Made by a program: the position numbers and the translations under genes
Notes under the pieces: model-generated
What the model was told of the DNA's origin: nothing
The model's input: the letters and a program-made list of their open reading frames with translations, nothing else
Databases searched by the model: none
Shown here: positions 28,272 through 63,694 of the stretch, piece by piece
How the letters are laid out: each line of letters opens with the position of its first letter
Position numbering within the stretch: position 1 is the first letter of the stretch
From: Macrostomum lignano
Lineage: Eukaryota
Length of the DNA: 64,000 bases
Assembly: GCA_002269645.1 (NCBI GenBank)
Contig: NIVC01000728.1
Location: 62,001 to 126,000 of the forward strand
Reading direction: 5' to 3'

Positions 28272-30702
28272 TAAGGCAGGTTAATTTCTATAGTTCTGTA
28301 CAATTAGCGGTAATTTTACAGCTTAAGAAGCCATATAGATAACTAACATCTAAAGTAATTCAAAGCCTGGTAGTAGCCTCTGGGTGTTCTCTGGGTAGCC
28401 AGTTTGCAGTACAGTATGAATCAATTGAATTTGGCCCAACTTGTGATAAAACTACTGTACTATTGTCGTATTTTACGCTTCCGCGCTCTAATAGGTACTT
28501 GCTTTAACCAGCTCGCGGCTAAACTGTGTGTGAAGCTTCCCGGGGCATTTACTTTTTGACCATAGACAGCGTTCTCTGATGTTGTGAAGCTGAAACTGCT
28601 CCTGCATTGAATTTGTGCCAGTGGTCAGCAAGCAGACGACTGCTGTCTATAGACTTGGGCCCAGTCTAACCCACAGAATCTGTGGTCTAACCCCAGCTCA
28701 AAACATTCTAACCGAAGTAAGGTTTAGCCATAGACAAAGTTATCCTCAGTCTGAATTGAATTTCCGCTAGTTTTTTTTAGAACTGGACTTTGATCAAAAT
28801 TGAACGTGAAAAGGTGTAATATGATCATTTTCCAGAGAAATTCTCTCTCTCAGTCATCTCATTACAGCTGTTGAAAAAAATGGCTGACTTTTGACCATAG
28901 ACATCATGATCTGTTTATACTTAACTTTTGACAGAATTAATAATAGAAGCAGTATGTAGAATTGCACTCTCTGAACCCGACCGTCCGCAAACCGCACGGA
29001 ACTTGCTTGTGCTGTATTTACAGTGCTGGCACTGTGCTAGGGGTGGAAAGTCTATTTCTACCGCAGCTCACACACCTGCTATCCTATCGGCTATCACAGC
29101 AGGGTGAATTGGAGTTCAGCTTATTCTTCCGATGTTGAGATGAAAATCCACTGCCATTCCAATTTCAGGGTCTCACAGCCAGAAGGATGGTCGGCGTGTG
29201 AATGCAGTGACTTCCAGCTTCAAGCACCTGCTTGTCTGATTTATTTTTACACACAATTAAAAACATTAATATTGATATACGCTCTTTGTGGTATACCTTT
29301 GCGTTATTCAATGCAGTTATATTCACGTTATCATGTTGACTACGTCGCCCAATTACTATAAAACATTGCATAAATATTTATATGACGCACGCTAACCCCT
29401 ATTGGCATCAATCATTCTATCCATTCAAACTTCATTGGCGACTTTACTTGCGTTTTATTTCTAATTTATTACTATATATTTTTGGTCGAATTCCTTTTGC
29501 TTGCATTATACCGACTAACTAAAATTCACACGAACAAATTGCACCGTTTATAACAAAACAGGAATTATAAGAAATTCGAATTGGATTTACACGAATTACT
29601 ATATTCTAAGTATTACTAAACATTAAACAATAGCTAAGTATGCTACAAAATATTACTAAATACTATTCAAGCTAAATTCTGTCAACAGTCTGTTTTGTTT
29701 CTTCGAGTCCTGACATAGCAAAAACACGAACAAATGGAAAAAGCCATTTTTAAAGTCTTACCAAATTTTCTACTAACATATACTTAAGTCATTACTGCTC
29801 ATACTACAGGGTATTGTTGAGGGAAATTATCATTAATTTTTGTGTCGTAGCATGATCGAGTCAGCTCAGACTATGACCTTCCGGTAAATAGTAATCAGTT
29901 AAAGGCTCATTGCACACTATACCCACCAATAGATTTTTCTGTCAGTCTTAACTTCACGGTGTCAAAGTTTTTACTTATTATTAATCAATTAAGGTATTCG
30001 ATGGAATATGAATTCGACACTATCGGATGTCACAATGTTTCTTTTTTCGTGCGTTGAATTTGCTGTAATTGGATATTTTTTAAATGCAGAATCCATGTGT
30101 TTGTGATAAAAAATTTACGGTCTTAAAACCTGTTATTGTGTCAATGTCTTCCAATTTTTCTGTTATACTGTGTCAGCAACAAACTCCGCTAATCTCCGTG
30201 TGTTATAAACTTATATTTCTGTCGTTAATTGATAACTCATATTTCATATTGATGGGTTTCGGTGTCAGGGTTAACCGCATACACATCAGCCCATGCCTGC
30301 ATGGCCTTGGATAGCTAGCCAGAAGCAGCGGTTTATTGTCCATTTGTACCGTAGATTAACCCTGCTATTTTTCACCGTATATCCCAACCCCCCTGGTCAG
30401 TGAAAAGTTATTCTCAAATAAAAATAGAACGTTATGATATTATTATTACGCTCGTATTTGCATATATACACCCAACTGTGTCTCTGCGTTTTACTTAACC
30501 TGGTATCTACTAATTACACATCCGCGATCCTTTCTAGGGGGGGAGGTGGGCTAATTAAAACTCAACGGTAAACATGTCTGAATTTCGTGCTACGACCGGG
30601 CGTTTTTCGTCACGCCACAGCTGTTGAATATGTCAAAAAAAAGTGAGAAACCATGAGTGGACTCAAATTTTAATGGTGGTAAAATGATAAGTGGTAATTT
30701 CG

Positions 30703-33198
30703 TTATTGCCCAGAATGACAGAAAATTTCTAACTTATTAATAATTATTAATAACTTAATGTGCAGAGCTTCAAGAATGTTAAGTTTATGCTCATTTTTGC
30801 TGTTGTCTATGACCTTGAAATGAGAGGTTATGTCTGGCTCATCACAACAACCATGGCATTGCAGCAAATGTTCATGAATCGGAGAGTTTCGTTGCCTATG
30901 TTCCTTGGCTCTCGTGAGTAGGTGTCGCTTGGTTTTACCAATGTAGGTAATGCTCTGGTCAACAGAGCAACGAAAACGATAGATGACACCTGCCTTGAGA
31001 GCACATGGAACACGAGACTTTAAACTCCCAACAAATTGACTGACTTTATGAGTACGGAACACTACATGAATCTTAGTCTTAAAGAATTTTTGGCAAGTTT
31101 TGCGAATTTGCCTCTTAAACACAATCGAAGAGTTGCCCAAAAAAGGAAGAGTCAAGATTGGTTCTCCTGGTTCTCTATCTGGCCGCTTAGGTTTAAGCTT
31201 TTTTTCAATTTTTTCATCTAAGAAATTACCAATAACCTTCATGATGTAGTTGATAGGGTATCCATTGGCAGTGAGAATATTGATAATGTTGGTAAACTCG
31301 TTGTGCAGCAACGACCAAGAGCAACATACTGTATAGGCACGATGAAGCAGACAACGAATGACTCCCGTCTTCCATTCCCTGGGGCACAACGCCTGGAAAT
31401 TAAGCATCAAGTTAGTGAATGTGGGCTTGCGATACACTTCGGTCTCAATAGCGCAGTCCTTCAGATGGATCTCGATGTCAAGAAACGGTAGTTTCTTTCC
31501 ACCATATTCCACGGTGAATTTAATGTTAGGATGGGTGGCGTTTATTGTGTTGAAAAATTGCAGAAAGTCTTCCTCGTTATCAAAAATAGCGCATGTGTCA
31601 TCGACATACCGTTTGTAAAATTTCGGAGCACAGCTTTTTTCCATCCAGGTTTTCTCCCAATGTGACATGCAAACGTTAGCAAGAGTGGGGGCAAGAGGGC
31701 TGCCCATAGCGCAGCCGTCAATTTGCTGGAAGTACTTATCGCCGAATTGGAATATCCCAGACGTGGCAATAACCAACAATTTCTTAAACACTTTCTCCGG
31801 GATTGGTGGCGCTGGGTTGTCTTTGAAGACCAAATTGGTAGCAATGTCGATCGCCAGATTCAGCGGAACATTGGTAAATAGAGAGGTGACATCGAAGCTA
31901 TACAATTGATCTTCGCGAGATGGGGTGTAATTGCTGATGGCTGTTATGAATTCCCTATTGGACCGCAAACTGAAATCCTGAGGGATGCATGGCTTGATAA
32001 ATGAGTCTAGAAATTTAGCCAGCTCATATTCAGCCGTGTTCAGCATAGACACAATGGGTCTCAATGGTTTGTCTTCCTTATGGACCTTGCACGAGCCATA
32101 GAGTTGGCCAGGTTGACTCCCACACGGCATAATCTTCTTGTACACATGGTCACTTATGTGCGGTCTGACATAGGTTCTAATATAGTTTTGGATAGAGCGT
32201 TCAGATTTAAGAACAGGGTGTGACACGGTAACCCTTTCATCGGCAGGTCCTAAGCATTTAAATTTGGTTTTGTCTTGAATTAAGTTGGTCATTTTGGCCT
32301 CATATTCAGCACTGTCTAAAATAGCAACGCCATAGCCCTTGTCAAAGCTCAAAATCTTGATTTGTTCATTATTGCGGATGTCCTTAAGGGTTCTGTGAAA
32401 AAACTTGTTCTGTTTATTGTTGATGGACATGAGAGCACGGGAGCAGAAGTGATCAGTGTCAGAGATAATTCTGTTCTTGCAACCATCGGGAAGGAAGTGC
32501 GCGTCACGGCTACCGGTATTACTAAGAGGTCGAGTACACTTACCAATGGCATTCTCTAACTCAGAGAAGAGGTGAAACTTGTTGAGCTTGGAAGGAAGAA
32601 TCGGGTGTTTCAAACCAAATTGCAGTGCATGTAGCTCATTTAGAGAAAGCTCATGCCGGGAAAGGTTGACAACAGCGTTCGGAATTGGAGAGGCGAATTG
32701 CTTCTCGATCCAGAGACTCTTCAGCTTATTGTCCAGTTTCACCTTGGCAACGTCAGCTTGTTCTTTGGACCTTTTTGAGACAAGTTGACACAGCGTGACG
32801 AAAGAAATCACACCCAGCCGAGAGCTCAGATGCTCTTTCCGTATCTGCAGTTGTTGGCGCAGCCGTCTCAACTTAACTTGGTTGACTCTGAGCTGTCGCT
32901 TCACTAAAGTAGTGTGCAGATCCGAGATGTTGTGAAAGGCCGGGGTACCTGGGGACTTGAATCTAACAAACTTCGGTGTGAGATTCAGTTCCAAACATTG
33001 TTGCAGAAAGGCTTGGTCGATCTGTAGTTTCAGGTATGAAACAGTGAGTCGTTCAAACTTGCGAAGATAGGGGACAGTCACGTCATTGTAGCGCTTGTTG
33101 ATATCGAAATAGAATTGCGGTAGAGAAGCACTCTTAACAGATAATAGTAAGACAAAACTCAATATTATTTGCGACGCGTTTCGGCTAAAACTAGCCAT
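30703..33198 (-). CDS. Penelope-like element ORF: reverse transcriptase plus GIY-YIG endonuclease (831 aa; native C-terminus replaced)
   Basis: RT motifs PLRPIVS, YSFDVTSLFTNVP, QIDGCAMGSPLAP, KRYVDDT, LPFLDI; endonuclease GVIYRF...YIGKTKRHLLTRAKEH...LNILEALHI. The last 15 aa come from flanking DNA; the neighbouring copies end HKPTLNVQLSGGGASEQLLVF. Confidence 0.95.
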   Translation of the reverse strand: MASFSRNASQIILSFVLLLSVKSASLPQFYFDINKRYNDVTVPYLRKFERLTVSYLKLQIDQAFLQQCLELNLTPKFVRFKSPGTPAFHNISDLHTTLVKRQLRVNQVKLRRLRQQLQIRKEHLSSRLGVISFVTLCQLVSKRSKEQADVAKVKLDNKLKSLWIEKQFASPIPNAVVNLSRHELSLNELHALQFGLKHPILPSKLNKFHLFSELENAIGKCTRPLSNTGSRDAHFLPDGCKNRIISDTDHFCSRALMSINNKQNKFFHRTLKDIRNNEQIKILSFDKGYGVAILDSAEYEAKMTNLIQDKTKFKCLGPADERVTVSHPVLKSERSIQNYIRTYVRPHISDHVYKKIMPCGSQPGQLYGSCKVHKEDKPLRPIVSMLNTAEYELAKFLDSFIKPCIPQDFSLRSNREFITAISNYTPSREDQLYSFDVTSLFTNVPLNLAIDIATNLVFKDNPAPPIPEKVFKKLLVIATSGIFQFGDKYFQQIDGCAMGSPLAPTLANVCMSHWEKTWMEKSCAPKFYKRYVDDTCAIFDNEEDFLQFFNTINATHPNIKFTVEYGGKKLPFLDIEIHLKDCAIETEVYRKPTFTNLMLNFQALCPREWKTGVIRCLLHRAYTVCCSWSLLHNEFTNIINILTANGYPINYIMKVIGNFLDEKIEKKLKPKRPDREPGEPILTLPFLGNSSIVFKRQIRKTCQKFFKTKIHVVFRTHKVSQFVGSLKSRVPCALKAGVIYRFRCSVDQSITYIGKTKRHLLTRAKEHRQRNSPIHEHLLQCHGCCDEPDITSHFKVIDNSKNEHKLNILEALHIKLLIIINKLEIFCHSGQ

Positions 33199-33207
33199 CT
33201 TCAGGCA
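33170..33207 (-). ncRNA. Minimal type I hammerhead ribozyme (PLE-type), copy 1; contains the ORF ATG
   Basis: Minus strand reads UGC-CUGAAGA-U-GGCUA-GUUU-UAGCC-GAAA-CGCG-UC-GCA: complete core (CUGANGA, GAAA, UC), 5-bp stem II, palindromic ACGCGU stem III, 3-bp stem I (UGC/GCA). Confidence 0.85.
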
Positions 33208-33347
33208 CTATCGAACAGAATTTATTTCAACCTATTAAATACTGTGTAGACGACAAAATCAGGTATTGAAAAGATATAAAAGGACTAAAGGATCAATGTA
33301 CAGTATAGCAATGTTCATAATATTTTTTGTGGAATGACAGGACAGAG

Positions 33348-33384
<37 letters not shown>

Positions 33385-33411
33385 GCGTATGCGCCCCAAA
33401 TGTACTCTAGC

Positions 33412-34342
33412 TTAGAACACCAACAGCTGTTCACTCGCACCTCCTCCAGATAGTTGGACATTGAGAGTGGGTTTGTGTAACTTAATGTGCAGAGCTTCAA
33501 GAATGTTAAGTTTATGCTCATTTTTGCTGTTGTCTATGACCTTGAAATGAGAGGTTATGTCTGGCTCATCACAACAACCATGGCATTGCAGCAAATGTTC
33601 ATGAATCGGAGAGTTTCGTTGCCTATGTTCCTTGGCTCTCGTGAGTAGGTGTCGCTTGGTTTTACCAATGTAGGTAATGCTCTGGTCAACAGAGCAACGA
33701 AAACGATAGATGACACCTGCCTTGAGAGCACATGGAACACGAGACTTTAAACTCCCAACAAATTGACTGACTTTATGAGTACGGAACACTACATGAATCT
33801 TAGTCTTAAAGAATTTTTGGCAAGTTTTGCGAATTTGCCTCTTAAACACAATCGAAGAGTTGCCCAAAAAAGGAAGAGTCAAGATTGGTTCTCCTGGTTC
33901 TCTATCTGGCCGCTTAGGTTTAAGCTTTTTTTCAATTTTTTCATCTAAGAAATTACCAATAACCTTCATGATGTAGTTGATAGGGTATCCATTGGCAGTG
34001 AGAATATTGATAATGTTGGTAAACTCGTTGTGCAGCAACGACCAAGAGCAACATACTGTATAGGCACGATGAAGCAGACAACGAATGACTCCCGTCTTCC
34101 ATTCCCTGGGGCACAACGCCTGGAAATTAAGCATCAAGTTAGTGAATGTGGGCTTGCGATACACTTCGGTCTCAATAGCGCAGTCCTTCAGATGGATCTC
34201 GATGTCAAGAAACGGTAGTTTCTTTCCACCATATTCCACGGTGAATTTAATGTTAGGATGGGTGGCGTTTATTGTTTTGAAAAATTGCAGAAAGTCTTCC
34301 TCGTTATCAAAAATAGCGCATGTGTCATCGACATACCGTTTG
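33412..34342 (-). pseudogene. 5'-truncated upstream PLE copy (from the RT YVDD motif to the intact GIY-YIG C-terminus)
   Basis: ORF 33412-34239 matches the C-terminal region of the main ORF and has the native stop; the copy breaks at KRYVDD. Confidence 0.9.
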
Positions 34343-34356
34343 AATTTTTACAAACG

Positions 34357-34686
34357 GTCATCTATCGTTTTCGTTGCTCTGTTGACCAGAGCATTACCTA
34401 CATTGGTAAAACCAAGCGACACCTACTCACGAGAGCCAAGGAACATAGGCAACGAAACTCTCCGATTCATGAACATTTGCTGCAATGCCATGGTTGTTGT
34501 GATGAGCCAGACATAACCTCTCATTTCAAGGTCATAGACAACAGCAAAAATGAGCATAAACTTAACATTCTTGAAGCTCTGCACATTAAGTTACACAAAC
34601 CCACTCTCAATGTCCAACTATCTGGAGGAGGTGCGAGTGAACAGCTGTTGGTGTTCTAAGCTAGAGTACATTTGGGGCGCATACGC

Positions 34687-34725
<39 letters not shown>

Positions 34726-34958
34726 CTCTGTCCTGTCATTCCACAAAAAATATTATGAACATTGCTATACTGTACATTGATCCTTTAGTCCTTTTATATC
34801 TTTTCAATACCTGATTTTGTCGTCTACACAGTATTTAATAGGTTGAAATAAATTCTGTTCGATAGTGCCTGAAGATGGCTAGTTTTAGCCGAAACGCGTC
34901 GCAAATAATATTGAGTTTTGTCTTACTATTATCTGTTAAGAGTGCTTCTCTACCGCAA
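34357..34958 (+). mobile_element. Inverted PLE pseudo-LTR (GIY-YIG end, 3'UTR with (CT)15, AATAAA, hammerhead, first codons of the ORF)
   Basis: Reverse complement of 33115-33714, differing by one CT unit in the microsatellite; AATAAA at 34847-34852. Confidence 0.9.
34866..34903 (+). ncRNA. Minimal type I hammerhead ribozyme (PLE-type), copy 2
   Basis: tgcCTGAAGAtggctagttttagccGAAAcgcgTCgca; predicted cleavage after C34900. Confidence 0.85.
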
Positions 34959-35304
34959 AACTTAGACTAGTCGTAGACCTTCATAAAAGATGAGATTTAT
35001 TGGAACCGGTGGCGAGACCGACAGTTTTCTCTCAGAAACAACTGGTCGCCATAAGACTTTGTGGTAGCTGCTGGTCAAACACTTTGCTCTCAACGATGCG
35101 CAGCCCCTTCCATACAGGGGCATAAGTAAACTCTTTTAAATTACCAAGCATGCATTTGGTAAATAATGAGTGGTGCTTGTCTTTGGTTCATGAGTTGGTG
35201 CTTGAATTCCAAGATTCATACCATGGATTCCCAGAAAGTCGGGAAGCTATCCGGCTCGTTCATCTGCCCCGTCGTTGACAACTGTCCATGCGACTTTTAA
35301 TATA

Positions 35305-35490
35305 GAGGCAGAGGGCTGTGTGCCACCCTGCTGGCGCCATTGTCACACAACCGGCGAGAGGCATTACTGCTCACACAGGAGTGTACAGCGGCCCTAACTT
35401 TATTTATCGTTTGGTATGTACACTTCACTGTGCCTTGTGGGTTGGCCCCCTCAAGGGCGTTAATTGCACGAGCAGTGGAGCCGATCTGCG
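35305..35490 (-). mobile_element. SINE family B fragment, reverse orientation
   Basis: acaaccggcgagaggcattactgc...agcggccctaactt...gtacacttcactg...ttaattgcacgagcag is the reverse complement of the body of 41245-41600. Confidence 0.65.
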
Positions 35491-36867
35491 TTATTTTTTT
35501 TAACAATCCATTTGCACTACTGTTAATAGGGTGGATAAAAATATGCTTAAAAGGAATTTTTCCTTAAGCGAAAATATACGAAATAGAAACTAATGCATAC
35601 AAACTGTAAAGTTGATGATCGATAGATCATTAATGAATTTTTGACAACATTTACGGGCGTACATATGTGATTTTCATTTTTACATCACTCTCGCTCATTT
35701 ATTTCAATAAATTTTTGATAGGTAATCATGAAAACCTAAAGGAATGCCTGTAAAGGCGACTTTTAAGGGGTAGCTTTTAACTTATGGATCCTTTCTTACA
35801 AGCAATATCGTCTCATTAGCTTTGGTACGCCTTGTAAGTTTCTTCAAAATCTGACTTTATTGCGCAACACAACGCAAAACGTCGCAAAGTCAGCCACCTC
35901 AAAATGGAAATATAAAAACAAATACGACTAAATTTTGCAAAGCTATGTTGAGCTTGATGGGAAGTAGTGAAGCTGCGCTGTTTCGCGCATACCTAGCTAT
36001 GTTGCATGGTTAAGCAGTGACGCCACAGCGGCTGCACTGCAGCTGTCACACACTGGGACTACAGTCAATAGCTTTTAAAGCAGCAATTTAGAGCTATTGA
36101 GAGCCTTTCTATCCTTGCATGAGGAGCCGGTAAGCTCTCTGACAGTGTCTAGTTAGGGACGGATCCCACTCAGAGCCAGCATTGACTGGTGCGCTTGCAT
36201 GGAATATGCCAGCAACAATTTCCTCGTTTTACACGCTCTATCACCTAGCTGCCTTCAGTTGCCTCCTCTACTCTCTTTCTGTTGCTGCTCCTCTCTCCTA
36301 CCCTCCGTTTTAGTTGTTAGGGGCAACGCAGCAAAACACGGCTTCACCAGTTTTACTCCACAACCCCCACCCCCAGTCGCAGCGCTGAAGACTTTAATTC
36401 CATGCATCCTTCCCAATTCTAAGGCAAGAGAGCAAACAGAGTGGCTGGCAAGGTCTACCCCGACGAAGCAAGGTCCCGGAGGCTGCACGCGCATTGTCTG
36501 CCCAAGCAACACAGCTGCGCAGAGAACCTTGGCAGCCAGCAACTCAAACAACCCACCGTTCTGGCCTTCACAAGCGCTCGCCAACATCGATCTGCTGCAT
36601 GGACGGGCACGGAGGGAAGAGAGGGAGGGGGCGATAGAGCTGAATCTGGAGCCCAGATAAGCAACAGAAATTGAAGAGCCGGGTATGGAGAGGAGGGTGG
36701 GGAAGACCAGAGAAACAATGGGCTGTCAGCCGCTGTTGGGGTGGCGCTAGCAGAGACTGGTTGGCTACAAATTTGGCGTCACTAGGGGAGTCCATAGATG
36801 CTGGCAGGGAGACAGGATTCCAATACTAATCGCTGGTATAGCCTAAGTTCTGCAACATCAAAACGAA

Positions 36868-37473
36868 ATGCGCCACTGGTCTGCGTTGCTTCTTCTGTTC
36901 CTGCCGCTGCTTCTGCAGTCAGCATTTGGGGCTGAGGCAGAGCTTCCAGAAGGCTACAATGAGAAGTGTTTGAAGGACTCGAACCAGCCCTACTCGAAGG
37001 AAAACTACCAGGATTGCACGAATTCTGAAGCGGCCGAGGAGGGTCGCACGGAGTGCTGCACTGTGGGCGGCGAGAAAGGCTGCTGCAAGCCAACCGAAAC
37101 TGGCCGAATGCTGAAGATCGCCTTCGGAATAATCGGAGTGGCCCTAGGCCTGGGCATCATCGTGTACATCTGCACCTGGTGCGACAGGGACACCTGGCCC
37201 TGCATCGGCCGCATCGAGGACGCCTGGCGGCCCAAGCAGCACAAGTTGGAGGAAAGCCTGATCTGCTGTCGGGACCGTGTCGAACGCCGCCGCCTCGAGG
37301 AGGAGCACCGCCGCAAGTACGCCGCCAAGGACGGGGCTGAACACGACGGCGAACCAGACGCGTTCGAAGAAGAGGATGAATCCCCGACGAGTGTCGATGA
37401 CACCAGACGGGCCAATCTGAAGCTGGAGGCACCGGAAGAGTTCAAGGCGAAGGTGCAGGACTCCTGGTTCTGA
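36868..37473 (+). CDS. Single-pass type I membrane protein, Shisa-like six-cysteine (C-C-CC-CC) ectodomain, 201 aa
   Basis: Signal peptide MRHWSALLLLFLPLLLQSAFG; ectodomain C-x14-C-x12-CC-x7-CC; TM segment IAFGIIGVALGLGIIVYI; juxtamembrane cysteines; charged tail ending DSWF; GC-rich codon use. The family assignment rests on pattern only. Confidence 0.8.
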   Translation: MRHWSALLLLFLPLLLQSAFGAEAELPEGYNEKCLKDSNQPYSKENYQDCTNSEAAEEGRTECCTVGGEKGCCKPTETGRMLKIAFGIIGVALGLGIIVYICTWCDRDTWPCIGRIEDAWRPKQHKLEESLICCRDRVERRRLEEEHRRKYAAKDGAEHDGEPDAFEEEDESPTSVDDTRRANLKLEAPEEFKAKVQDSWF

Positions 37474-38422
37474 TTGATGGCCTGAGACACTTGTGCTTGA
37501 TGAAGCTAGAAGAATCTGGGGGAACAAGACCAGTGGACAAGGGAGTCTGGAGGAGCTGAACTGAATCGAACCTGAAAATTTTTAAAGCTTAAAGAAGAAT
37601 TGCGGCAAACTGTTTGCTTCTCATTCTGATAATCTAAAAAAGGAATTCATAATCGCTCTTTTTCATTTACTGAACCCTTTGAGAACACCACCACCTTGCT
37701 GGACGGAAGCCAAATACCTGTTGCTTGCAGTTTCTATGCATCGCCTTGCTTTCTACTATTTATCTGACGAAAATCGACAAAGACAAAAGATTGTTGATTA
37801 TTTTATAAAAATCAGTTTTTTCTATTTTATCCCATTTTTTTCCAAAAAAATTTCAAACGGCGATTGGTGATATTTTAATAAAGATTCTGTGCCGTTGCTG
37901 TACCGTTGATGTAGCTATATCGTTTTTCGCTAAAACTAGACATCGTAAACTTTAAAAAAATATTTTTATTTTTACTGCTCTATGGATCTCTTCGTGTAAA
38001 ACACTGTAGCTAATTAATATGGATATCAATAAATAATGCTATTTTAACTATAGCTGGTCCCGGCCATTTTTTTGTTAAAAGCAACGAGTACGAACATCGC
38101 GGCGGAAAAAATTATAATATTAAATAAAATTTCGCATTGGCTTCTTTGCTGCTTTGAACTAAGTCCGATGTAGGTTCATTAAATTGAATGCTTGCGCCAT
38201 AGCTTAACACTATCAAGCATTAATTTAGCACGAGGACTGATAGCGCTGAAGTCCATGGGTTCGATTCCACAGTCACAGCTTATTCTGATACTCGTTTTTT
38301 TTAATTACACCTGCTTTAATGCGCAGATGTGCAACCGACAGCTCAGCTGCAGCTATTGCGCACCGCATCTGAAGGCTGCGTATGGCTGCTCAGGCTAAAC
38401 ACTAGGGGTCGCCACACACACC

Positions 38423-38560
38423 CTCAACTACCCCAGCTAATGCTGGCACCCATTTTACAGCTGGGTGAGCTGAAGTGATGCAGACCGTTAAGTGTCTTGC
38501 TCAAGAACACAAATTGTTCGGAGTGGGTCGAGAATCGAACCCCCGACCCTAGGCTACAAC
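38423..38560 (-). mobile_element. Second copy of the CORE-type SINE, with an internal deletion in the tRNA head
   Basis: Reverse complement matches 47321-47485 but lacks about 30 nt between gtagcctag and ggtcgggggttcg. Confidence 0.75.
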
Positions 38561-40120
38561 AACTACTCGTGCACTCGTGCACAGAGATTGGCCTGCGGAT
38601 TGGATCTCACGTTAAAAAGTCAGGTTGAAAATTCCCACTACTTTTCAGAGACCCATTGTAAGTTGAAATTCTAGGTTTTACTCATATCTTTCATATAGTG
38701 CCACTGAAAGTAACAAGTATCATCGCCAACTGGTCAGCTGGAAATAAGTCAGCCACAATCCATACATCGGTCGCGTATGCATCATGTATTTGAAAATATT
38801 GGGGCCAGAAATTTAATACCCCAAATGATCAATGAGGTGCTGTTGCATGTAATAGTGCTTTGTCTTCTCGCTACAAATTCTCAGCGGGGTGAGCTATACA
38901 GAGTAGACAGAGCACAGCGAAAACGAAGGCAACCCACTGACCGCAGATTCAGGGACTGACGTTTAGTCCTCCAAGGGCTGCGGAGAATATTAAAATATAT
39001 ATCCTTCCCTTCAGCCTATGCAAACTGACGGATGGCGTGAGTGGACTGCAAACATTAGGCCTTGTGATGGGAGTATTGCAATATTCTATATGCAGCTCGG
39101 CAATATCCTGATGACTGCTTGCGCGTGTTTAAAGCACACAGGATGCGATTCAACTGTCTGAGGACACTGAAGCCTAATATTAGAAAATGGTATCTATGGT
39201 GTTTTTTCTGGGGCTCCGTTTATCAATCTACTTTTTTACCTCGTATATCATGGCTATCTTAAAACCCTCCTCTAAAGTAATATTAAGAAAGGCGGATCAA
39301 ATCCTATCTTAGCTTGCCTTCCTATCGCGGCTGCTGCTATACCTTATCCAGGGTATTGCGGCAGACTTGTCGTAAGTCTTATAATGAAACTAAAAAGACG
39401 CACAAAAGGGGAGTTGCGATGTTTGCCTTGTGGCAGCGTGCTGTTTGCTTGCTAAATCTGACTTGCCAGGTTTGCCTGCCAAATACAATGTGATATTTTG
39501 TGACTTCTGTTTTAATATTCTACTTATGCTAGTAGAAAGCCTACTAATACAGCGGCCACAGACACTTCTATTTTATGAGGCTCACAGCAGATGCAAAACA
39601 AATGCTAGGGTATTGGCTCGAATTATGATACATACGTGTATTAATTAATAATACATCGTACACTGTAGTCCATTAACTAATATGATGCGAACTGAGTGAT
39701 GATACCGACTTGGCCGACACCGACCGATTGAAACAGTTTATCAAGCGCTTCGAATGTGGACGATACGTCTGGTTAACCTAACCCAGGTATTTTTTGTTCG
39801 AAATTTTTAGCGGTAATAGGTTGTTTGACACTCGTAAATAATTACCGTTATTTAAATGTAGCACGCCAAACAAACTATCCAAGTAGCTAGTCAAGAAACC
39901 AGCTAAAAGCTTTATTTTTTGTCAATCATGACCCGATTGCCGCGTAAGTCTGCGACTACAGAATAGTATGGACAACCTAAAGATAAAAAGCTAAATGATC
40001 AGCCATAAATGTCTAGCCATGGGAAAAGTTATGAACGATCACGATTGGTTGATAGTAAATACATTTCTTCCACCTAGTTAGTTTCTCTCTTCCCATCTCT
40101 TCGCAAACAAAATGCAGAGC

Positions 40121-40127
40121 TATAAAG
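40121..40127 (+). promoter_or_regulatory. Possible TATA box of the neuropeptide gene
   Basis: TATAAAG about 125 nt upstream of the ATG; motif only. Confidence 0.3.
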
Positions 40128-40251
40128 AGACCTAGGTGTGCGATTCCCGCCTCCATTTATGAGCTAGCCAAAACCTCTAGATTGCGAGCGCGTAAGCCAG
40201 CAATTGGAAACAAGAGCGAGCAGCAACAGCCTTTATAATAACTGAGCCACT

Positions 40252-40866
40252 ATGGATAAGGGGTAAAAGTGGATATTCCATTTTCTTTTTTTGTTTTATT
40301 GACAAGTTTAACACGAAATTATACTTTTATCCATTTCCAGAGTCATCTACCACATCCTTATACTGGGATTGTTGATTGTAGCACTGGGACCCTGTGGAAT
40401 GGCAGTTCCTGCTGCTTCCGATGATGACGAAGCTGATGAAGGAGAAGTCAGCAATCAAATAGCGAACCAATATTTGGACAAGAAGGGCTACTACTGGCCC
40501 GGAATGTGGAACTTCAACCGAGAGTCATCTGGAAAGCGGTCCTACTACTGGCCTGGAATGTGGAACTTCAACCGAGAGTCATCTGGAAAGCGTTCCTACT
40601 ACTGGCCTGGAATGTGGAACTTCAACCGAGAGTCAACTGGAAAGCGGTCCTACTACTGGCCTGGAATGTGGAACTTCAACCGAGAGTCATCTGGAAAGCG
40701 GTCCTACTACTGGCCTGGAATGTGGAACTTCAACCGAGAGTCAACTGGAAAGCGGTCCTACTACTGGCCTGGAATGTGGAACTTCAACCGAGAGTCATCT
40801 GGAAAGCGTTCCTACTACTGGCCTGGAATGTGGAAATACGACAGCGACTCGACGAATGACTATTAG
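40252..40866 (+). CDS. Neuropeptide precursor (exons 40252-40262 and 40341-40866; 178 aa) with seven YYWPGMW peptides
   Basis: ATGGATAAGGG|gtaaaa...ccatttccag|AGTC joins in frame to give signal peptide MDKGVIYHILILGLLIVALGPCGMA, then an acidic spacer, KK, six 54-nt units (G/S)YYWPGMWNFNRES(S/T)-G-KR and terminal SYYWPGMWKYDSDSTNDY. Confidence 0.9.
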
Positions 40867-41244
40867 CAATTAACTGTTAACTCAAGTAGATTGGAAGCAT
40901 GAAGCATGATGATTCCAACGAGTTTTAGGGTTAGCTAACTAAAGGCTTTAAAAATTCTACTGACCTACACTGGTACTTGAAATTCGATTTCAGGTTTTTC
41001 GGTCTTAAAATCAGACTTCTTTAAAGTTAATTTACGCGGAAGTCATGGCTAACTATTCTTTTCAAAAAACGGAATATAAAAAAACTTTAAAACGATTTAA
41101 TGATAAAAATAAACTGTAATCAAGCAAACGTGTTGTCTCTTCACTTCCATTATTTGAGCAACAGAGCATCGCAGCAACTCATATATTTTTTCGTTTATTC
41201 TGTATAATACAATGTCTTATTTACGATGTAAACAATGCAACGCA

Positions 41245-41600
41245 GGGGGCCGTAGCCCAGCGGTCTAGCGCAGGCTCTGGTGTGCCAGCGACCCAGGCTC
41301 GATTCCAAGTGCAGTCACATTAATTTGGGGCTGAATTGGAATATCGGCTTGGCTCTGCTCGTGCAATTAACGGCCTTGAGAGCCAACCCCCCCCCCAAGG
41401 CGCAGTGAAGTGTACATGCCTAACGATAATATGAAGTTAGGGCCGCTGTGCACTTCTGTGTGAGTGCCTGTGCGTATGACTGCGTACGTATCCGCGCGCT
41501 TGTGTGCCTGCTCAGGGGAGTCGGCGGAATGGGCAGTAATGCCTCTCGCCGGTTGTGAGCCTATCTCGCTTGAAGTGCGCCAGGGTGCACACAACCCCCT
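41245..41600 (+). mobile_element. tRNA-headed SINE-like dispersed repeat, family B (longest copy)
   Basis: A box TAGCCCAGCGG and B-box-like GGCTCGATTCC; body motifs gtgtacatgcct, tgtgtgagtg, gcggaatgggcag and ccggttgtg are shared with four other loci. Confidence 0.7.
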
Positions 41601-42763
41601 GCCTCTACATTCGACAAGGTGACAACAAAAATTACTAAAAGTGAAGTTGCAAACGATTAGCTGCGATTCAGTTTATAAAGTCGAGACGAAAAATCGTAGA
41701 AACATTAACTGTAATAATCGGCAGACTGTAAAAGAGCGACCCTAAAGGCTGAGTGCGGACTAGAAATTAAATTAAAGAAGTCGGTAAACTGCCAGAAGAG
41801 TTGTCACATATGTTAGCTAGTGCCCAGTTTGAGAAAGAAGCCCACAGCAGCAGATGAAGCTTATGCAACATCTTGTGTTGTTTGTCGAATCGAAAAACTA
41901 ATTAGCACGCTGATAAATCAAAGCCAAGCACGTAAAAAAGAGAATCATGTATCTAAGCTACAGGGTCTCAGTTTCCCCCACTGAAAAATCCATACGGCAT
42001 AGCTGCAAAAGAAGTCCCAGGCTAAATTGAGATTTTAATTAAATGCCAAAGTGAATGGCTTGCAAGTCGTATCCTGTGAGTGTGGATTTCAATTAATGAT
42101 TCAGCAGACATCACGCAAGCTGTGCCTGCAAGTGAGAAGCTGCTGCTGCTGGCAACCGGGCTCTGATATGAATACGAGCGCATGGAAATGACAAGCCGAA
42201 AGAATGACAACTGACAAAAATGAGTTACACTGCTAATGTCGATCTGCTTTGCCACAACGGCTGATAAGCATTCGAATATTATAGTGCATTTATTTAATCC
42301 TAGTCAAAAAAAGTTATTATTAACATATTTTAATTCAAATTTGCAGCTCCGAATACATTAACTACAGTTTAATTACAGACAGTTTAATTACAAAGTTTAA
42401 GTTTGATTACAGAATGCGAATTATTTAATGCGAAATTAAATAAAGCAGGAGCTTATGCTGGACAAAAAATTAAAACAAAAAACTATTTATTTTGTCACAA
42501 AAAGAAAATAATGCAAGCACGTTTGACACGAGATATTCGTACGAATACATTTAGTATTCAATAAAATTAGAAGACTATATGCGCGCAACTTTTTACTTTT
42601 AGTAGAAGCAGAAGCAAGCAAAATTCTGGATAAATTAAATACTGTCACAGGAAAAAGTTTTGCAGAAAGCCGATACTGTAAAGAAATAAGACTAGAGGGG
42701 TGTGGTTACTGAGTTACTAAACTACTCCCATGCAAGCGATGCGAAAACAACAATTTCGGCTTG

Positions 42764-43513
42764 CTAAGGTGTAGCAGGGACTGGCATGAAACGGCGTCCA
42801 CTGCGGCAGTTGCCAGACAGGTTGTCTGTCACAATTGTCACATTTGAGTCCCGGGATGCTTCGGCTTCCTGTTCTATTGTCTCCTCCACATTGTTGGCAA
42901 ACAGATCAAGACCAGATTGGATGACTGCAGAGTTTGGAGCAGCAGTAGACGCCTTGGCCACAGAGCCTGACAATTGGATTCGCGGAGTTGAGCAGGGCCA
43001 AGATGATGCAGGAGACTGAGACGCTGGCGGCGACGCCAATAACGCCGAAGCTGGTAGGGCTAAAAATCGAGATTCGGACAAAGTTTCAAAGGCGCCATCA
43101 GGTAGTTGGGCAAATTCGTCATCACAAACTGGCGTGCGGAGGCACAGGCTGCTGTAGCTGCTCGCACCGCCAACGCCAATCGAGGGTGTCAAAAAGAAAC
43201 GCGACGAAGATGAGGGGCAGAAGCTGGAGTTGGAAGACTGGCCAGCAGGGGTTGAGGGAGCTTGGAAATAGAGAGACTCGGCCCTGTCCATGCCATACAA
43301 ATGAGGCGCAAATTCAGACAGATAACAGCGCCACCAGCTGTAACCGCTACTGCTGCTGTCATTTCCTAGCAGACGAGTCAGCAAAGCTCGGTCGCGCACA
43401 TAGCAAGTGAGCAACTTGCCGTCAGTGTCAGCCAGACTGAGACGGCGGGTGGCACCATTTGAAGCTGGTGCAACAGAGTGCACACGGCAGATGACAGCTG
43501 CTTGCTGGCGATT
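42764..43513 (-). CDS. Orphan coding exon (probably terminal) of an unidentified minus-strand gene
   Basis: GC-rich 250-codon open frame in AT-rich flanks, preceded on the minus strand by acceptor tattgttattttccaag and ending in TAG. The N-terminal ~85 aa look globular and beta-rich; the rest is S/P/A-rich. Upstream exons were not found. Confidence 0.6.
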   Translation of the reverse strand, partial: NRQQAAVICRVHSVAPASNGATRRLSLADTDGKLLTCYVRDRALLTRLLGNDSSSSGYSWWRCYLSEFAPHLYGMDRAESLYFQAPSTPAGQSSNSSFCPSSSSRFFLTPSIGVGGASSYSSLCLRTPVCDDEFAQLPDGAFETLSESRFLALPASALLASPPASQSPASSWPCSTPRIQLSGSVAKASTAAPNSAVIQSGLDLFANNVEETIEQEAEASRDSNVTIVTDNLSGNCRSGRRFMPVPATP

Positions 43514-46375
43514 CTTGGAAAATAACAATATGGAGAGAAAACCTTTAGCAATTAGTTGGCTATATTTTAAATCTAGATATCATCTTAGCTCATTAGCTGC
43601 AATTAACATAGCACTAACATAGATACAAGAGCAATACAATATTTAGGAAACCTAGATCACAATAAAACAAGACAAGGCTAGGTCCAAAGTTTTCCTTAAG
43701 GTAAGCTATACCCTTGACCCCTTTGAACTTTTCCTCAAGGTGGGATGAAATCCAAAATTTTTGAGACTAGATAGAATTGAGATTTTATTTTTTGAGATCA
43801 AGGTAATTTAGGATAAACTGAATTTATGATCAGGATTATATCTCCTGATCATATTATAATTTTTTAGAAATTATGGATAACATGTAGATGACAAAGAAAA
43901 ATATTAGGATCATTTAGATTAGAATCCAAATTTTTGTTAGGATCCTAGGATTCTTTAATTTGGGATCCTGTACTAGCCTATTTTTATTAGACATTGACAC
44001 AGCTATATATTAAGATAAAAATAAAGATCATATGCTACTTAAAACTAAGATAATTTAGCTAAGTATAAATATAGCCTAATATATACTGTATTATAGAATA
44101 TAGGGTTTAATAACCTAAAACTTACTTTAAAAAGAATGTGTATATACCCAAAACAATCAATCACACATTGAATATATTAATATAAAAAAGGTCTTTTATA
44201 ACTAATAAATAAGCCTAATAGATAAGCCTACTAATAATGTTAGGTCTAAGAATCTAGTAGGCCTACCTAGTCTACCATAATATCTAAGTGCAAATCCAGA
44301 AAAGTTTTAGAGGGGAAGCAAGCTATACCAAGCATTACAACGGAATGTTAGAGAATGGACCTAGGCCTAGCATATTTTTTGGCTATGGCTAAGGTGAGTC
44401 CATGGCCCATTTGCCTTGCTGAGATTTGCCCTTGATAATATTATTAAAATAAAGTCTTGGAAGTAAAAAATAATTTATTCTAACATTTTAATTCCCTATA
44501 GACCTAGGCCAAAATATAATAGACAATATTCTATGAATCAGGCTATTATACTTTGAACTTTAGGCCTAAGTTTTATAATATCTACTGTTATATTATAACC
44601 TATATTATACTGATAGGTTATAATAACCTATTGTTTAGAGACATTTATATAAATACCTGAATGCTAACTTAACTAATTATATTATCTATGATAATTTATA
44701 ACCCCATTATATAAACAGTTTAATAGCTACACTAAAGCTTAGTCTAAGAACTTATTATGGAAGTCTTAATTAATATGCATATGAGTCTATAACATTTTAA
44801 CATAGTTCTGCTATTATACTATGATAACTTCTGCTATGATAACTGCTTACAGTTGTTAGGCCTATGAACTGAAATTGATTTTTTAAATAATAAACCCTAG
44901 GCCTAACTTCTAAGTTCTATGCTATGCCTATTATGGACTTTGGATGGTAGATTTAAAACTTTAAGTTTTAATTTTAACTTTTAAGCAATTTGACATCAAG
45001 GATAGTTTGTTTTGTAGGCCTAACCAAACCCATTTAGTATATATTCTTAGAAAATATAACCTATAAAAATGATCATATTATAAATATGTAAAGTATGAAC
45101 ATTAAATTACTCATATATATTGGATTCCGGTTAACCCTTCCTTCCTTCCATCAGGTCAGGCATGAGGTCAGGTCCCGATATTTGCATGCTTTCGAGAATT
45201 TCTAGATAATTTCAGTCAGTTGTAAAGAAATAAACATGTACTCCTTACAGGATTTTCGTTGCTTTTAGTTTTGGTTTATTAACCACTGAGCTAGTGTGAA
45301 CGAGGTAAAATGATTCTTATATAAAACATTTGTTTTACTGATATATTGGCGTCTGTGACTTTTTAACTTTCATTTTTACACTGCTTTTTGTTAAATTCAC
45401 TAGCTATGGTGACTACAATTCATAAGATGACAATGGAGTTTACCTTTTAAATATTGATTGTTGGTTTCCATTTTGTATGACTGAGCAGTTAAACTACTAA
45501 ATCAAAATTATAAATCTCATTTTGAACTGTTTATTTCGAAAGCATGACTGTTAAAAGAAAAGGTAATTTCTCTATCTTCTGTCAGCTAAATATGTTCTTT
45601 GTTTCGTTGAGATTTTTCTACGAAAACACACATTTAAGTAAAGATAATGTTTTATTAAGTGAATAAAAACCTTCAATTGCTCTTTAGTAAAACTAAAATT
45701 TCGAATTATGCAAAGCCTCTAGATGGGAACTTGCTCCGGCCTTTGTTGTATCTCTGGGATTTTGTTCCAAAAGTACAATCTCAAGAGCTTGTGCACTGAC
45801 AGAGGCATTCATAGATTAACAGTTTGTAGATAGGCTAATAATATATTAATCGATTAACCAATTTATTTAAGACTGCATGGTACTGCGGCTACTGCCTATG
45901 CGGCTACATTAAACCAAATATTGTTTCAAATAAATGGTAGGGACAGGAACAAGACCATACTTTTTAGATGCTTTTAGCCATTTTTCTGAATTCTGAAAGC
46001 AGAGAAATCAGTTTAAATATATTTGATACATTGATACATTGATACATTTTATTTCCATTAAAAGTTGAAATAAACGCCTATCCTTTAAATTTAAGTGCTG
46101 AAGTCCCAGAAGTATACGCATTTGTAAATGCAGGTTAGACATGTACAGTATGGTTGATTGATCCAATGCTCGTATTAGACTAGAGTTCTAGTTGAAAGAA
46201 TGAGTTTGTCCTTTCACTAGAGAAAATGGGCTCTGTTAGAGCATCTAAAGACTTTTAAACTACCAGATAGGACGGTTCATATCTATTTTCTATGCTCTTT
46301 CTTTACCAATGGAATGGTCGTCTATGGCTATACCTCACAGAAAAATGAAGCCTGAGGATACAAAACAAGTCATAG

Positions 46376-47644: not shown

Positions 47645-63694
<16,050 letters not shown>

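What the first reader, a model, noticed from the sequence alone, without database searches (positions are those of the whole stretch)
40252..40866. Apparently uncharacterised neuropeptide family: seven YYWPGMW peptides from one prohormone
Seen in sequence: a short ATG exon splices in frame to a signal peptide, an acidic spacer and dibasic-flanked repeats. Differences between repeat units are synonymous (CGG/CGT, CCC/CCT) or conservative (S/T), which argues for coding selection rather than a chance minisatellite ORF. Established processing rules (convertase cleavage at KR/KK, C-terminal Gly to amide) predict GYYWPGMWNFNRESS-amide x1, SYYWPGMWNFNRESS-amide x3, SYYWPGMWNFNREST-amide x2 and a non-amidated SYYWPGMWKYDSDSTNDY. 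Inference: I do not recognise this family. The PGMW core resembles the PG(L/M)W ends of GLWamide/MIP-type Wamides, but here it is internal and C-terminally extended. It may be a lineage-specific derivative or an unrelated new family.
Basis: partly seen in the sequence, partly recalled or inferred. Interest (0 to 1): 0.8.

Follow-up and report, generated by a model that had tools for sequence, protein, structure and literature searches.

The report
Orphan WPGMW peptide precursor in Macrostomum
This is a real, transcript-supported flatworm (Macrostomum lignano) gene for a secreted precursor that should be cut into seven near-identical Trp-rich peptides; it belongs to a small, unnamed, apparently lineage-restricted peptide family, which makes it a new orphan signalling-peptide candidate and not a new kind of system.

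Summary
Window 40252-40866 (+) is a two-exon gene: an 11-nt ATG exon, a 78-nt GT..AG intron and a 526-nt exon. It encodes 178 aa: signal peptide, acidic spacer, and seven xYYWPGMW units that each follow KK or KR.

The window is Macrostomum lignano GCA_002269645.1, contig NIVC01000728.1. The public annotation is built from RNA-seq transcript models, and it already calls a 178-residue product at exactly these coordinates.

Exhaustive protein searches found three real relatives. Two are M. lignano paralogues (A0A1I8HFB1, and BOX15_Mlig013514g1 in three genomic copies). The third is a transcript contig from SRA run SRR30276804.

Between genes, the WPGMW core has pN = 0 against pS = 0.76. The preceding dibasic pair is always kept, with varied Arg codons. 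The C-terminal tails evolve almost neutrally (pN/pS 0.89). The conserved part is therefore the N-terminal xYYWPGMW(N/Q/H/R/K)(F/Y/H).

It fails the defining Wamide test, because W is never C-terminal or Gly-extended. Pfam, PDB and full-text searches give no named family.

Neuronal expression and the mature peptides are untested. My verdict is a new member of a known kind (multi-copy prohormone), of moderate interest.

The parts
40121..40126 (+). TATAAA, putative TATA box 131 nt upstream of the ATG
   Evidence: Motif scan. The paralogue P0002 gene has CTATAAAT about 100 nt upstream of its ATG. Promoter function is inferred, not tested.
40252..40262 (+). Coding exon 1: ATG GAT AAG GG (M D K and 2/3 of G), followed by the donor GTAAAAG
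   Evidence: The start coincides with the annotated gene start. The paralogue P0002 has the same design: a 17-nt ATG exon and a phase-2 intron before the hydrophobic core.
40263..40340 (+). 78-nt phase-2 intron, GT..AG, with the pyrimidine-rich tract TTTTATCCATTTCCAG
   Evidence: Retention gives a stop after 4 codons. It is the only donor giving an open 178-aa product, which matches the annotated product length.
40341..40404 (+). Rest of the signal peptide (aa 4-25: GVIYHILILGLLIVALGPCGMA)
   Evidence: Kyte-Doolittle 11-aa maximum is 3.46 at ILILGLLIVAL. The -3/-1 rule allows cleavage at CGMA|VP or AAS|DD. The exon-2-only start (M24) has no hydrophobic region. This is a heuristic; SignalP was not available.
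40405..40479 (+). Acidic spacer VPAASDDDEADEGEVSNQIANQYLD
   Evidence: Translation. It has no counterpart in the paralogues.
40480..40863 (+). Peptide array. KK (40480-40485) is followed by seven units: u1 40486-40533, u2 40540-40587, u3 40594-40641, u4 40648-40695, u5 40702-40749, u6 40756-40803 (each xYYWPGMWNFNRES[S/T]G, separated by KR), and u7 40810-40863 (SYYWPGMWKYDSDSTNDY).
   Evidence: The WPGMW core and the preceding dibasic pair are invariant in all 20 copies across window, L001-L003 and L004. Between genes pN = 0 and pS = 0.76 for the core.
40864..40866 (+). Stop codon TAG
41108..41113 (+). AATAAA, candidate poly(A) signal 242 nt after the stop
   Evidence: Motif scan. Function is inferred.

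Best explanation
Window 40252-40866 is a Macrostomum lignano gene for a small secretory multi-copy peptide precursor of the prohormone type.

Proposed mechanism:
1. The spliced mRNA is translated into a 178-aa preproprotein.
2. The signal peptide, about 25 aa, is removed in the ER.
3. In the regulated secretory pathway a PC2-type convertase cuts after the KK pair and after each KR pair.
4. A carboxypeptidase trims the basic residues.
5. In this gene, the exposed C-terminal Gly of six units is converted to an amide.

The expected products are GYYWPGMWNFNRESS-NH2 (x1), SYYWPGMWNFNRESS-NH2 (x3), SYYWPGMWNFNREST-NH2 (x2) and SYYWPGMWKYDSDSTNDY (x1).

The functional determinant is the N-terminal motif small-(Y/S/T)-(Y/F)-W-P-G-M-W-polar-aromatic. 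It is shared with at least two other M. lignano genes and with one transcript from another sample. It probably acts as an intercellular signal on an unidentified receptor.

What is shown: the gene model, the transcript support, the family, and purifying selection on the core and on the cleavage sites. What is inferred: signal-peptide cleavage, convertase processing, amidation, signalling function and cell type.
For: - **Gene model and transcript support.** The GenBank annotation of GCA_002269645.1 calls a 178-residue product at exactly window 40252..40866. That annotation was built only from genome-guided RNA-seq transcript models with TransDecoder ORFs, after excluding transcripts that overlap repeat annotations.
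- **Same architecture in a paralogue.** The P0002 gene (three genomic copies, L001-L003) has a TATA box, a micro ATG exon, a phase-2 intron and then the signal-peptide core.
- **An independent transcript.** L004 is an intronless transcript contig from SRR30276804. It encodes signal peptide + RR|ASYWPGMW.. + KR|GYFWPGMW.. x2 + KR|ATFWPGMW.. + a Cys-containing tail.
- **Selection.** Between genes the WPGMW core has pN = 0.000 against pS = 0.762. Codons 1-10, which include the dibasic pair, have pN/pS = 0.22. The tails have pN/pS = 0.89. The second basic residue uses five codons: AAG, CGA, CGC, CGG and CGT.
- **Cleavage sites.** None of the 14 distinct cleavage sites has Arg at P4, so they are not furin RxxR sites (sequences; by inspection). 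This fits neuroendocrine-type convertases.
- **Processing enzymes in the species.** M. lignano has a nervous-system-expressed pc2 homologue, and GYIRFamide-type staining of its nervous system has been described.
- **Signal peptide.** Signal-peptide-like N-termini are present in all family members.
Against: - There are no expression-localisation data and no peptide detection for any family member.
- Most neuropeptide families conserve the C-terminus and its amide. Here the N-terminus is conserved, while amidation signals are present in this gene but absent from most units of the paralogues.
- The family was found only in M. lignano and one unidentified SRA sample, so there is no cross-phylum support.
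- UniRef names P0001 'Salivary secreted protein'. This is a weak, probably automatic, hint of a gland product.
- The signal peptide was judged by a heuristic, not by SignalP.
- KK, the first site, is a less favoured convertase site.
Confidence: 0.7

Rival explanations
1. The precursor and its dibasic processing are the same, but the product is exocrine and not neuronal. The peptides would be made in gland cells (pharyngeal, prostate/seminal-fluid, epidermal or rhabdite glands) and released as a pheromone, partner-manipulating, antimicrobial or defensive peptide.
For: - UniRef names P0001 'Salivary secreted protein'.
- The family is lineage-restricted, with fast-evolving tails and copy-number expansion. 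This is typical of reproductive or exocrine peptides.
- Conservation at the N-terminus with no conserved amide is unusual for neuropeptides.
- Multi-copy KR-separated Trp-rich peptides are also how yeast alpha-factor and some insect antimicrobial peptides are made (my own knowledge).
Against: - The motif was not found in the three held supplementary files of the M. lignano seminal-fluid ISH screen, though those files are small.
- The absence of furin-type RxxR sites favours the regulated pathway.
- Absolute conservation of a 5-residue core across saturated synonymous divergence looks more like receptor-ligand constraint than like antimicrobial peptides.
- The name 'salivary' is not based on expression data that I could see.
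Confidence: 0.2
2. It is a diverged member of the Wamide superfamily (GLWamide/MIP). The ancestral ..PG(L/M)W-amide end would have become internal through loss of the Gly-dibasic site and read-through into a C-terminal extension.
For: - The precursor is repetitive with dibasic sites, and it has two Trp residues and a PG(M)W string like cnidarian PGLW ends.
- Drosophila sex peptide shows that a longer, non-amidated peptide with an internal Trp pair can activate the MIP receptor.
Against: - The defining feature, a C-terminal Trp followed by Gly and a basic site, is absent from all 20 copies in five loci. W is always followed by N/Q/H/R/K and then F/Y/H.
- The Trp-Trp spacing is 3 residues. In protostome MIPs it is longer: about 6 by my own knowledge, and the review describes 9-12-aa peptides with N- and C-terminal Trp.
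- No sequence search linked the family to any Wamide precursor.
- A 4-residue resemblance is within chance.
Confidence: 0.06
3. It is an uncleaved secreted structural repeat protein rich in Tyr and Trp, for example an eggshell, adhesive or cuticle-like component. It is not a peptide precursor.
For: - P0002 carries Gly/Tyr-rich stretches (GGGYGERYYDYYGGARY and a C-terminal NNYYYYYD) that recall flatworm Tyr-rich eggshell proteins (the resemblance is from my own knowledge).
- The units are aromatic-rich.
Against: - A dibasic pair precedes every unit in every gene, with K/R exchange and synonymous Arg-codon turnover. This is what cleavage-site selection predicts.
- Spacers vary freely in length, from 6 to 24 residues, and in sequence between units. 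This is unlike structural repeats.
- The proteins are very small, at 160-178 aa.
Confidence: 0.03
4. It is a chance ORF through a 54-nt minisatellite that happens to be transcribed, so there is no functional product.
For: - The window is full of minisatellites with long ORFs.
- Tandem and simple repeats make up 15% of this genome.
- Two forward frames are open across the array.
- Within-array variation gives no evidence of selection.
Against: - The same peptide motif, in the same frame, occurs in non-repetitive paralogues with different codons and spacers, and with signal peptides.
- Between genes pN = 0 and pS = 0.76 for the core.
- The intron design is shared with a paralogue.
Confidence: 0.01

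Closest known systems
Wamide superfamily (cnidarian GLWamide/metamorphosin A; protostome MIP/allatostatin-B/WWamide)
   Same: Both have a repetitive proneuropeptide with multiple dibasic sites and short Trp-containing units. The PGMW string resembles the PGLW ends, and there are two Trp residues per peptide.
   Different: In Wamides the Trp is the amidated C-terminal residue (W-G-basic). Here W is internal in all 20 copies and is followed by polar and aromatic residues. The W-W spacing is 3, whereas in protostome MIPs it is about 6 (my own knowledge). Conservation is N-terminal. No sequence search links the two.
Flatworm orphan neuropeptide precursors (npp/spp families of McVeigh 2009, Collins 2010, Koziol 2016)
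   Same: The precursor logic is the same: signal peptide, spacer, and several copies of a short peptide between dibasic sites. Both are often lineage-restricted and recognised only by architecture.
   Different: No WPGMW, YWPG, FWPG, PGMW or WPGLW string occurs in the main text or in the 8 held supplementary files of the planarian peptide-hormone study. 'WPGMW' occurs in none of the 8.3 million searched full texts. McVeigh 2009 and Koziol 2016 could not be read, so a prior npp number for this family is not fully excluded.
Orcokinin / pedal-peptide type precursors
   Same: Both have many tandem copies of a 13-18-aa peptide separated by KR. The peptides are mostly non-amidated, with a conserved N-terminal part and a more variable acidic C-terminal part (my own knowledge).
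   Different: There is no sequence similarity: orcokinin is NFDEIDRSGFGFx and pedal peptide is PxDSxxGxxGxSGFx. Pfam gave no hit. This is an analogy of design only.
M. lignano paralogues A0A1I8HFB1 (P0001) and BOX15_Mlig013514g1/Mlig027226g1 (P0002), and the transcript SRR30276804_9377 (P0009/L004)
   Same: All share a signal peptide, dibasic sites, the x(Y/S/T)(Y/F)WPGMW(N/Q/H/R/K)(F/Y/H) core, and a micro first exon with a phase-2 intron. These are true family members.
   Different: The window gene has a recently expanded, near-identical 54-nt array of 7 units with Gly-KR amidation signals. P0001 has 16-aa units without Gly. P0002 and P0009 have 3-4 divergent units plus a conserved C-terminal Cys-loop peptide (YWLGKACGETGDxxACSxLNG) that the window gene lacks.

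Membership tests
Wamide superfamily (GLWamide/MIP) | Repetitive precursor with multiple cleavage sites flanking short peptides | tested here: met
   There are seven units between KK/KR sites.
Wamide superfamily (GLWamide/MIP) | Conserved C-terminal Trp that is amidated (W-Gly-basic in the precursor) | tested here: not met
   In all 20 copies (window, L001-L003, L004) the second Trp is followed by N/Q/H/R/K and then F/Y/H, never by Gly plus a basic site. P0001 is the same.
Wamide superfamily (GLWamide/MIP) | Protostome MIP pattern: N- and C-terminal Trp separated by about 6 residues in a 9-12-aa peptide | tested here: not met
   The spacing is invariably 3 (W-P-G-M-W), and the predicted peptides are 15-18 aa or longer. 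The figure of about 6 is from my own knowledge; the 9-12-aa length is.
Wamide superfamily (GLWamide/MIP) | Activation of a MIP/sex-peptide-type receptor or a MIP-gated channel | not testable with these tools
   This needs a receptor assay.
Generic neuropeptide / peptide-hormone prohormone | N-terminal signal peptide | tested here: met
   The test was heuristic only. The h-region is ILILGLLIVAL (KD 3.46) and -3/-1 sites are present. The signal peptide is absent if exon 1 is omitted. SignalP was not run.
Generic neuropeptide / peptide-hormone prohormone | Conserved peptide units bounded by mono- or dibasic convertase sites, with the peptide under stronger constraint than the spacers | tested here: met
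   A dibasic pair precedes every unit. Core pN = 0 against pS = 0.76, and tail pN/pS = 0.89.
Generic neuropeptide / peptide-hormone prohormone | Transcribed and correctly spliced | tested here: met
   The test was indirect. The GenBank gene model has an identical span and product length, and that annotation derives from RNA-seq transcript assemblies. Reads were not inspected.
Generic neuropeptide / peptide-hormone prohormone | Expression in neurons or endocrine cells and storage in dense-core vesicles | not testable with these tools
   No expression data were reachable. The gene IDs were not found in full texts.
Generic neuropeptide / peptide-hormone prohormone | Mature peptides detectable and bioactive | not testable with these tools
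   Predicted masses are given. No M. lignano peptidomics paper was found.
WPGMW precursor family (defined here) | Signal peptide plus two or more copies of basic-basic-x-(Y/S/T)-(Y/F)-W-P-G-M-W-polar-aromatic | tested here: met
   The window gene has 7 copies. P0001 has at least 5, P0002 has 3 and L004 has 4.

The most novel reading that the evidence does not exclude
The WPGMW peptides are ligands of a previously unrecognised peptidergic signalling system in macrostomid flatworms. One possibility is a new neuropeptide/receptor pair. Another is a Wamide-derived ligand whose internal Trp pair still addresses a MIP/sex-peptide-type receptor, as Drosophila sex peptide does. If so, it might be used between mating partners in this hermaphrodite and not only within the nervous system.
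Probability: 0.1. Interest if true: 0.6.

Novelty: new member of a known kind. Interest (0 to 1): 0.4.

Why it matters
Macrostomum lignano is a transgenic model flatworm for work on regeneration, stem cells and sexual conflict, yet its peptide signalling repertoire is barely described. I found no peptidomics study of it.

A small gene family with an absolutely conserved WPGMW core and three or more paralogues gives a concrete set of ligands. They can be synthesised, localised, knocked down and matched to orphan GPCRs.

The family also shows a pattern that motif-based neuropeptide mining tends to miss. Such mining anchors on C-terminal amides, whereas here the N-terminus is conserved and the C-terminus is free.

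This does not change any general concept. Orphan lineage-specific prohormones are found in every phylum that is examined.

Tried and rejected
- **Exact look-ups of the spliced 178-aa product.** The annotation was reached instead through the neighbouring 201-aa ORF.
- **Profile of single 20-aa units (A2).** It was too short for the search tool.
- **Profile of two-unit segments (A3).** It returned only one irrelevant 24-bit hit and failed even to recover the known members. That search is therefore uninformative and not evidence of absence.
- **Profile of the P0002-type precursors (A4).** It recovered only P0002 and P0009.
- **Exhaustive phmmer over 1.84 billion representatives.** It gave 28 hits at E <= 1e-3. 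I read the sequences of 13 of the remaining 25. P0009 is a relative, and the other 12 are unrelated low-complexity or repeat proteins. I did not read the other 12 hits (P0007, P0008, P0012, P0013, P0015, P0020-P0027), and I assumed from their lengths and low identities that they are the same kind of hit.
- **Metagenome scan for two WPGMW-coding cores 33-63 nt apart.** It gave 9 hits, all chance matches in GC-rich simple repeats such as (WPGM)n or in mixed frames.
- **Other databases.** Pfam gave nothing above threshold for any family member. PDB sequences gave nothing. Rfam found nothing real and ARAGORN found no tRNA around the gene.
- **Literature.** 'YYWPGMW' and 'WPGMW' gave 0 papers. The gene and UniProt IDs gave 0 papers. 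The planarian prohormone paper and its supplements contain no related motif. The supplements of the seminal-fluid ISH screen contain no motif. McVeigh 2009 is not held.
- **Minisatellite artefact and structural repeat protein.** I considered both and rejected them; see the rival explanations.
- **C-mannosylation motif.** The motif is W-x-x-W (my own knowledge), and the spacing here is W-x-x-x-W, so I rejected this too.

Full report
**1. What is in the sequence.**
Window 40488-40835 is a clean 54-nt tandem array: 6.4 copies, 97% matches, no indels, TRF score 661. An ORF at 40369..40866 (+) reads through it.

Joining ATGGATAAGGG (40252-40262; donor GTAAAAG) to the acceptor ..TTTCCAG|AGTC at 40341 gives a 537-nt CDS. 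The 178-aa product is MDKGVIYHILILGLLIVALGPCGMAVPAASDDDEADEGEVSNQIANQYLD-KK-[GYYWPGMWNFNRESSG-KR], then five S-initiated units (ESS/EST), then SYYWPGMWKYDSDSTNDY*. This donor is the only in-frame GT that gives an open product. Intron retention stops after four codons.

A TATAAA lies 131 nt upstream of the ATG, and an AATAAA lies 242 nt downstream of the stop.

**2. Where the window comes from, and whether the gene is known.**
The product of the neighbouring ORF 36868-37473 matches exactly a gene on Macrostomum lignano GCA_002269645.1, contig NIVC01000728.1. The 16.6-kb locus fetched around it (L005) is identical to window 28868-45473.

In that record a gene is called at L005 11385..11999, which is window 40252..40866.

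The genome paper says the GenBank annotation is the 'coregenes' subset of a genome-guided RNA-seq transcriptome (StringTie/TACO plus a de novo assembly, with ORFs from TransDecoder). Transcripts overlapping repeat annotations were removed. I did not see the reads themselves.

**3. Is it more than a minisatellite ORF?**
The array on its own does not show this.
- The window holds about ten other minisatellites with long ORFs.
- Tandem and simple repeats make up 15% of this genome.
- A second forward frame is open across the array.
- The few differences among the six full units (2 synonymous and 3 non-synonymous nucleotide positions) are compatible with no selection, P = 0.27.

The decisive evidence comes from relatives.

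**4. Relatives.**
A word-indexed search of 5.8 billion proteins found two relatives, both from M. lignano.
- P0001 (UniRef A0A1I8HFB1) is C-terminally truncated. It has its own signal peptide and then ..NEDKR-[GYYWPGMWNFRNAD-KR]n.
- P0002 (BOX15_Mlig013514g1 and Mlig027226g1) reads: signal peptide, RR-ASYWPGMWQFDR.., KR-GYYWPGMWNFDRYYDESSPLEG, KR-AYYWPGMWRYQQRRPS, KR, and a Cys-containing tail.

An exhaustive phmmer search of 1.84 billion cluster representatives added one more, P0009. I read the sequences of 13 of the remaining 25 hits; apart from P0009 they are unrelated repeat proteins, and the other 12 hits were not read.

P0009 lies on a 926-nt contig of SRA run SRR30276804. Read in full, the contig is an intronless, transcript-like sequence. 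It encodes MATSLSRTAACLVLAVLAVALSPCVASPTGWAVE-RR-ASYWPGMWHFNRDF.., KR-GYFWPGMWHFSRNRKQFE, KR-GYFWPGMWQYRRSDEQ.., KR-ATFWPGMWRHRQ.., RR, and ..YWLGKACGETGDLYACSVLNGIFDY*. It is 48% identical to P0002 and shares its C-terminal Cys-loop.

The P0002 gene occurs three times in the assembly, which fits the known redundancy of this genome. It has the same design as the window gene: CTATAAAT, then about 100 nt, then a 17-nt ATG exon (ATGACAACTCTTGGAAA|GTAAGC), a phase-2 intron, and an acceptor just before the hydrophobic core.

**5. Selection.**
Across the 20 copies in five loci, W-P-G-M-W is invariant at the protein level. Its Pro codon varies (CCT/CCC/CCG) and so does its Gly codon (GGA/GGC). The preceding two residues are always basic (K/R, then K/R). 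The second of them uses AAG, CGA, CGC, CGG and CGT.

Nei-Gojobori counts between genes:

| Region | pS | pN | pN/pS |
|---|---|---|---|
| WPGMW core | 0.76 | 0.000 | 0 |
| Dibasic pair + xYYWPGMW (codons 1-10) | 0.60 | 0.13 | 0.22 |
| Eight codons after the core | 0.66 | 0.59 | 0.89 |

Synonymous sites are saturated, the core and the cleavage sites are frozen, and the tail is nearly neutral. This is the signature of a processed bioactive peptide whose determinant is N-terminal. It rules out a chance ORF.

Within the window gene the units are 97-100% identical in DNA. Its seven-copy array is therefore a recent expansion or is kept homogeneous by unequal exchange. The alternating ESS/EST pattern suggests a 108-nt higher-order unit.

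**6. How it most likely works.**
- *Shown:* the gene, its transcript support, the family, and the selection pattern.
- *Heuristically supported:* a signal peptide. The h-region is ILILGLLIVAL, and cleavage is possible at CGMA|VP or AAS|DD. The signal peptide is lost if exon 1 is omitted.
- *Inferred from established prohormone processing rules:* cleavage after KK/KR, carboxypeptidase trimming, and Gly-to-amide conversion for six units.

None of the 14 distinct sites in the family has Arg at P4. They are not furin RxxR sites, which fits PC1/3- or PC2-type convertases of the regulated pathway (inspection). M. lignano has a pc2 homologue expressed in the nervous system and essential for development, and GYIRFamide-type staining of its nervous system has been described.

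The amidation signal is not a family feature. P0001 units end ..NAD-KR, and several P0002 and L004 units end ..QFE-KR..AEE-KR and ..RPS-KR. An Arg is common 3-4 residues after the core (NFNR, QFDR, NFDR, HFNR, HFSR, QYRR). Shorter, monobasic-cleaved forms such as SYYWPGMWNFN are therefore possible but speculative.

The Pro-Gly between two aromatic clusters would favour a turn that brings the Trp and Tyr side chains together. This is an inference only.

**7. Comparison with known families.**
Pfam has no model for any member, and PDB has no related sequence.

[quoted passage not shown] That feature was tested here and is not met in any copy. The W-W spacing of 3 also differs from MIPs, where it is about 6 (my own knowledge). 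The PGMW/PGLW resemblance covers four residues and is best treated as chance. A derived relationship cannot be excluded without receptor data. Drosophila sex peptide shows that a long, non-amidated peptide with an internal Trp pair can use the MIP receptor.

The strings 'YYWPGMW' and 'WPGMW' occur in none of the 8.3 million searched full texts. The gene and UniProt IDs also occur in none. The planarian prohormone catalogue and its supplements contain no related motif. No M. lignano peptidomics paper was found. The two closed-access flatworm neuropeptide surveys could not be checked: McVeigh 2009 was not held, and Koziol 2016 is known to me only from memory and was not requested.

In design, the nearest analogues are the orphan flatworm npp/spp precursors and the orcokinin/pedal-peptide type, with many KR-separated, mostly non-amidated copies and a conserved N-terminal part. 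This is an analogy, not a membership.

**8. Distribution.**
Members were found only in M. lignano and in one unidentified SRA sample. A motif scan of JGI metagenomes gave only chance simple-repeat hits. Short or single-copy relatives would escape these searches, and one profile search was technically uninformative. 'Macrostomum-restricted' is therefore provisional.

**9. Verdict.**
The gene call is confirmed and was already public as a hypothetical protein. The interpretation as a multi-copy secretory peptide precursor of an unnamed family is well supported.

Three things remain inference: that it is a neuropeptide in the strict sense, what the exact mature forms are, and whether it has any Wamide ancestry. 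The main rival is the same precursor used by an exocrine gland; P0001's database name 'Salivary secreted protein' is a weak hint in that direction.

It is a new member of a known kind. It will interest flatworm neurobiologists and people working with the M. lignano model, but it does not change any general concept.

Noticed in passing
window 54886-55968 (-): A single-ORF rhodopsin-family GPCR of 360 aa (Pfam 7tm_1, 2.7e-14). Its best solved-structure matches are peptide receptors (somatostatin R4/R3/R1 and MCH-R1). It lies 14 kb from the peptide gene on the opposite strand. No exactly matching product is on record. It is a candidate orphan peptide receptor, but nothing links it to the WPGMW peptides.
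   Followed up: partly
window ~4300-29201 (+): A large ferlin gene. The annotated product has 2045 aa with C2, FerI, FerA, FerB and Ferlin_C domains, and its exons are visible as ORFs at 9261-10010, 15604-16347, 19047-19787 and 25265-25822. Its introns carry coding-looking minisatellites at 4366-5355 and 5405-6533.
   Followed up: partly
window 30703-33198 (-) and 33412-34239 (-): A Penelope-like retroelement ORF of 831 aa (RVT_1 plus a C-terminal GIY-YIG). Immediately next to it is a truncated second copy that shares the C-terminal 275 aa.
   Followed up: partly
window 41246-41310 (+): A tRNA-like head (GGGGGCCGTAGCCCAGCGGTCTAGCGCAGG...GGCTCGATTCC) with A-box and B-box-like motifs, about 380 nt downstream of the peptide gene. 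It is probably a tRNA-derived SINE. Neither ARAGORN nor Rfam called it.
   Followed up: partly
window 36868-37473 (+): A single-exon 201-aa protein with a signal peptide, a Cys-rich ectodomain, one transmembrane segment and an acidic tail. It is annotated in GenBank and has no Pfam family. It served as the handle that identified the contig.
   Followed up: partly
window 1963-2532, 50288-51098, 51547-53182, 52958-53741, 57587-58090, 58722-59378, 59672-60505, 61329-63299: A dense set of minisatellites that produce long spurious ORFs on both strands, for example (DRQT)n / (LSVC)n and ([10 protein letters not shown])n. They are a reminder that an ORF through a repeat is not evidence of a gene in this genome.
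   Followed up: no
L001 6913-7039 / L004 (P0002 and P0009 C-termini): The P0002-type paralogues end in a strongly conserved Cys-loop peptide, YWLGKACGETGD(xx)ACS(I/V)LNG, after the last dibasic site. It has 8 residues between the cysteines. It is probably a second, disulfide-bridged bioactive peptide from the same precursor, and the window gene lacks it.
   Followed up: partly
L003 11985-12888 (-): A neprilysin-like Peptidase_M13 gene lies about 5 kb downstream of one copy of the P0002 paralogue. M13 peptidases degrade neuropeptides. This is likely a coincidence.
   Followed up: no
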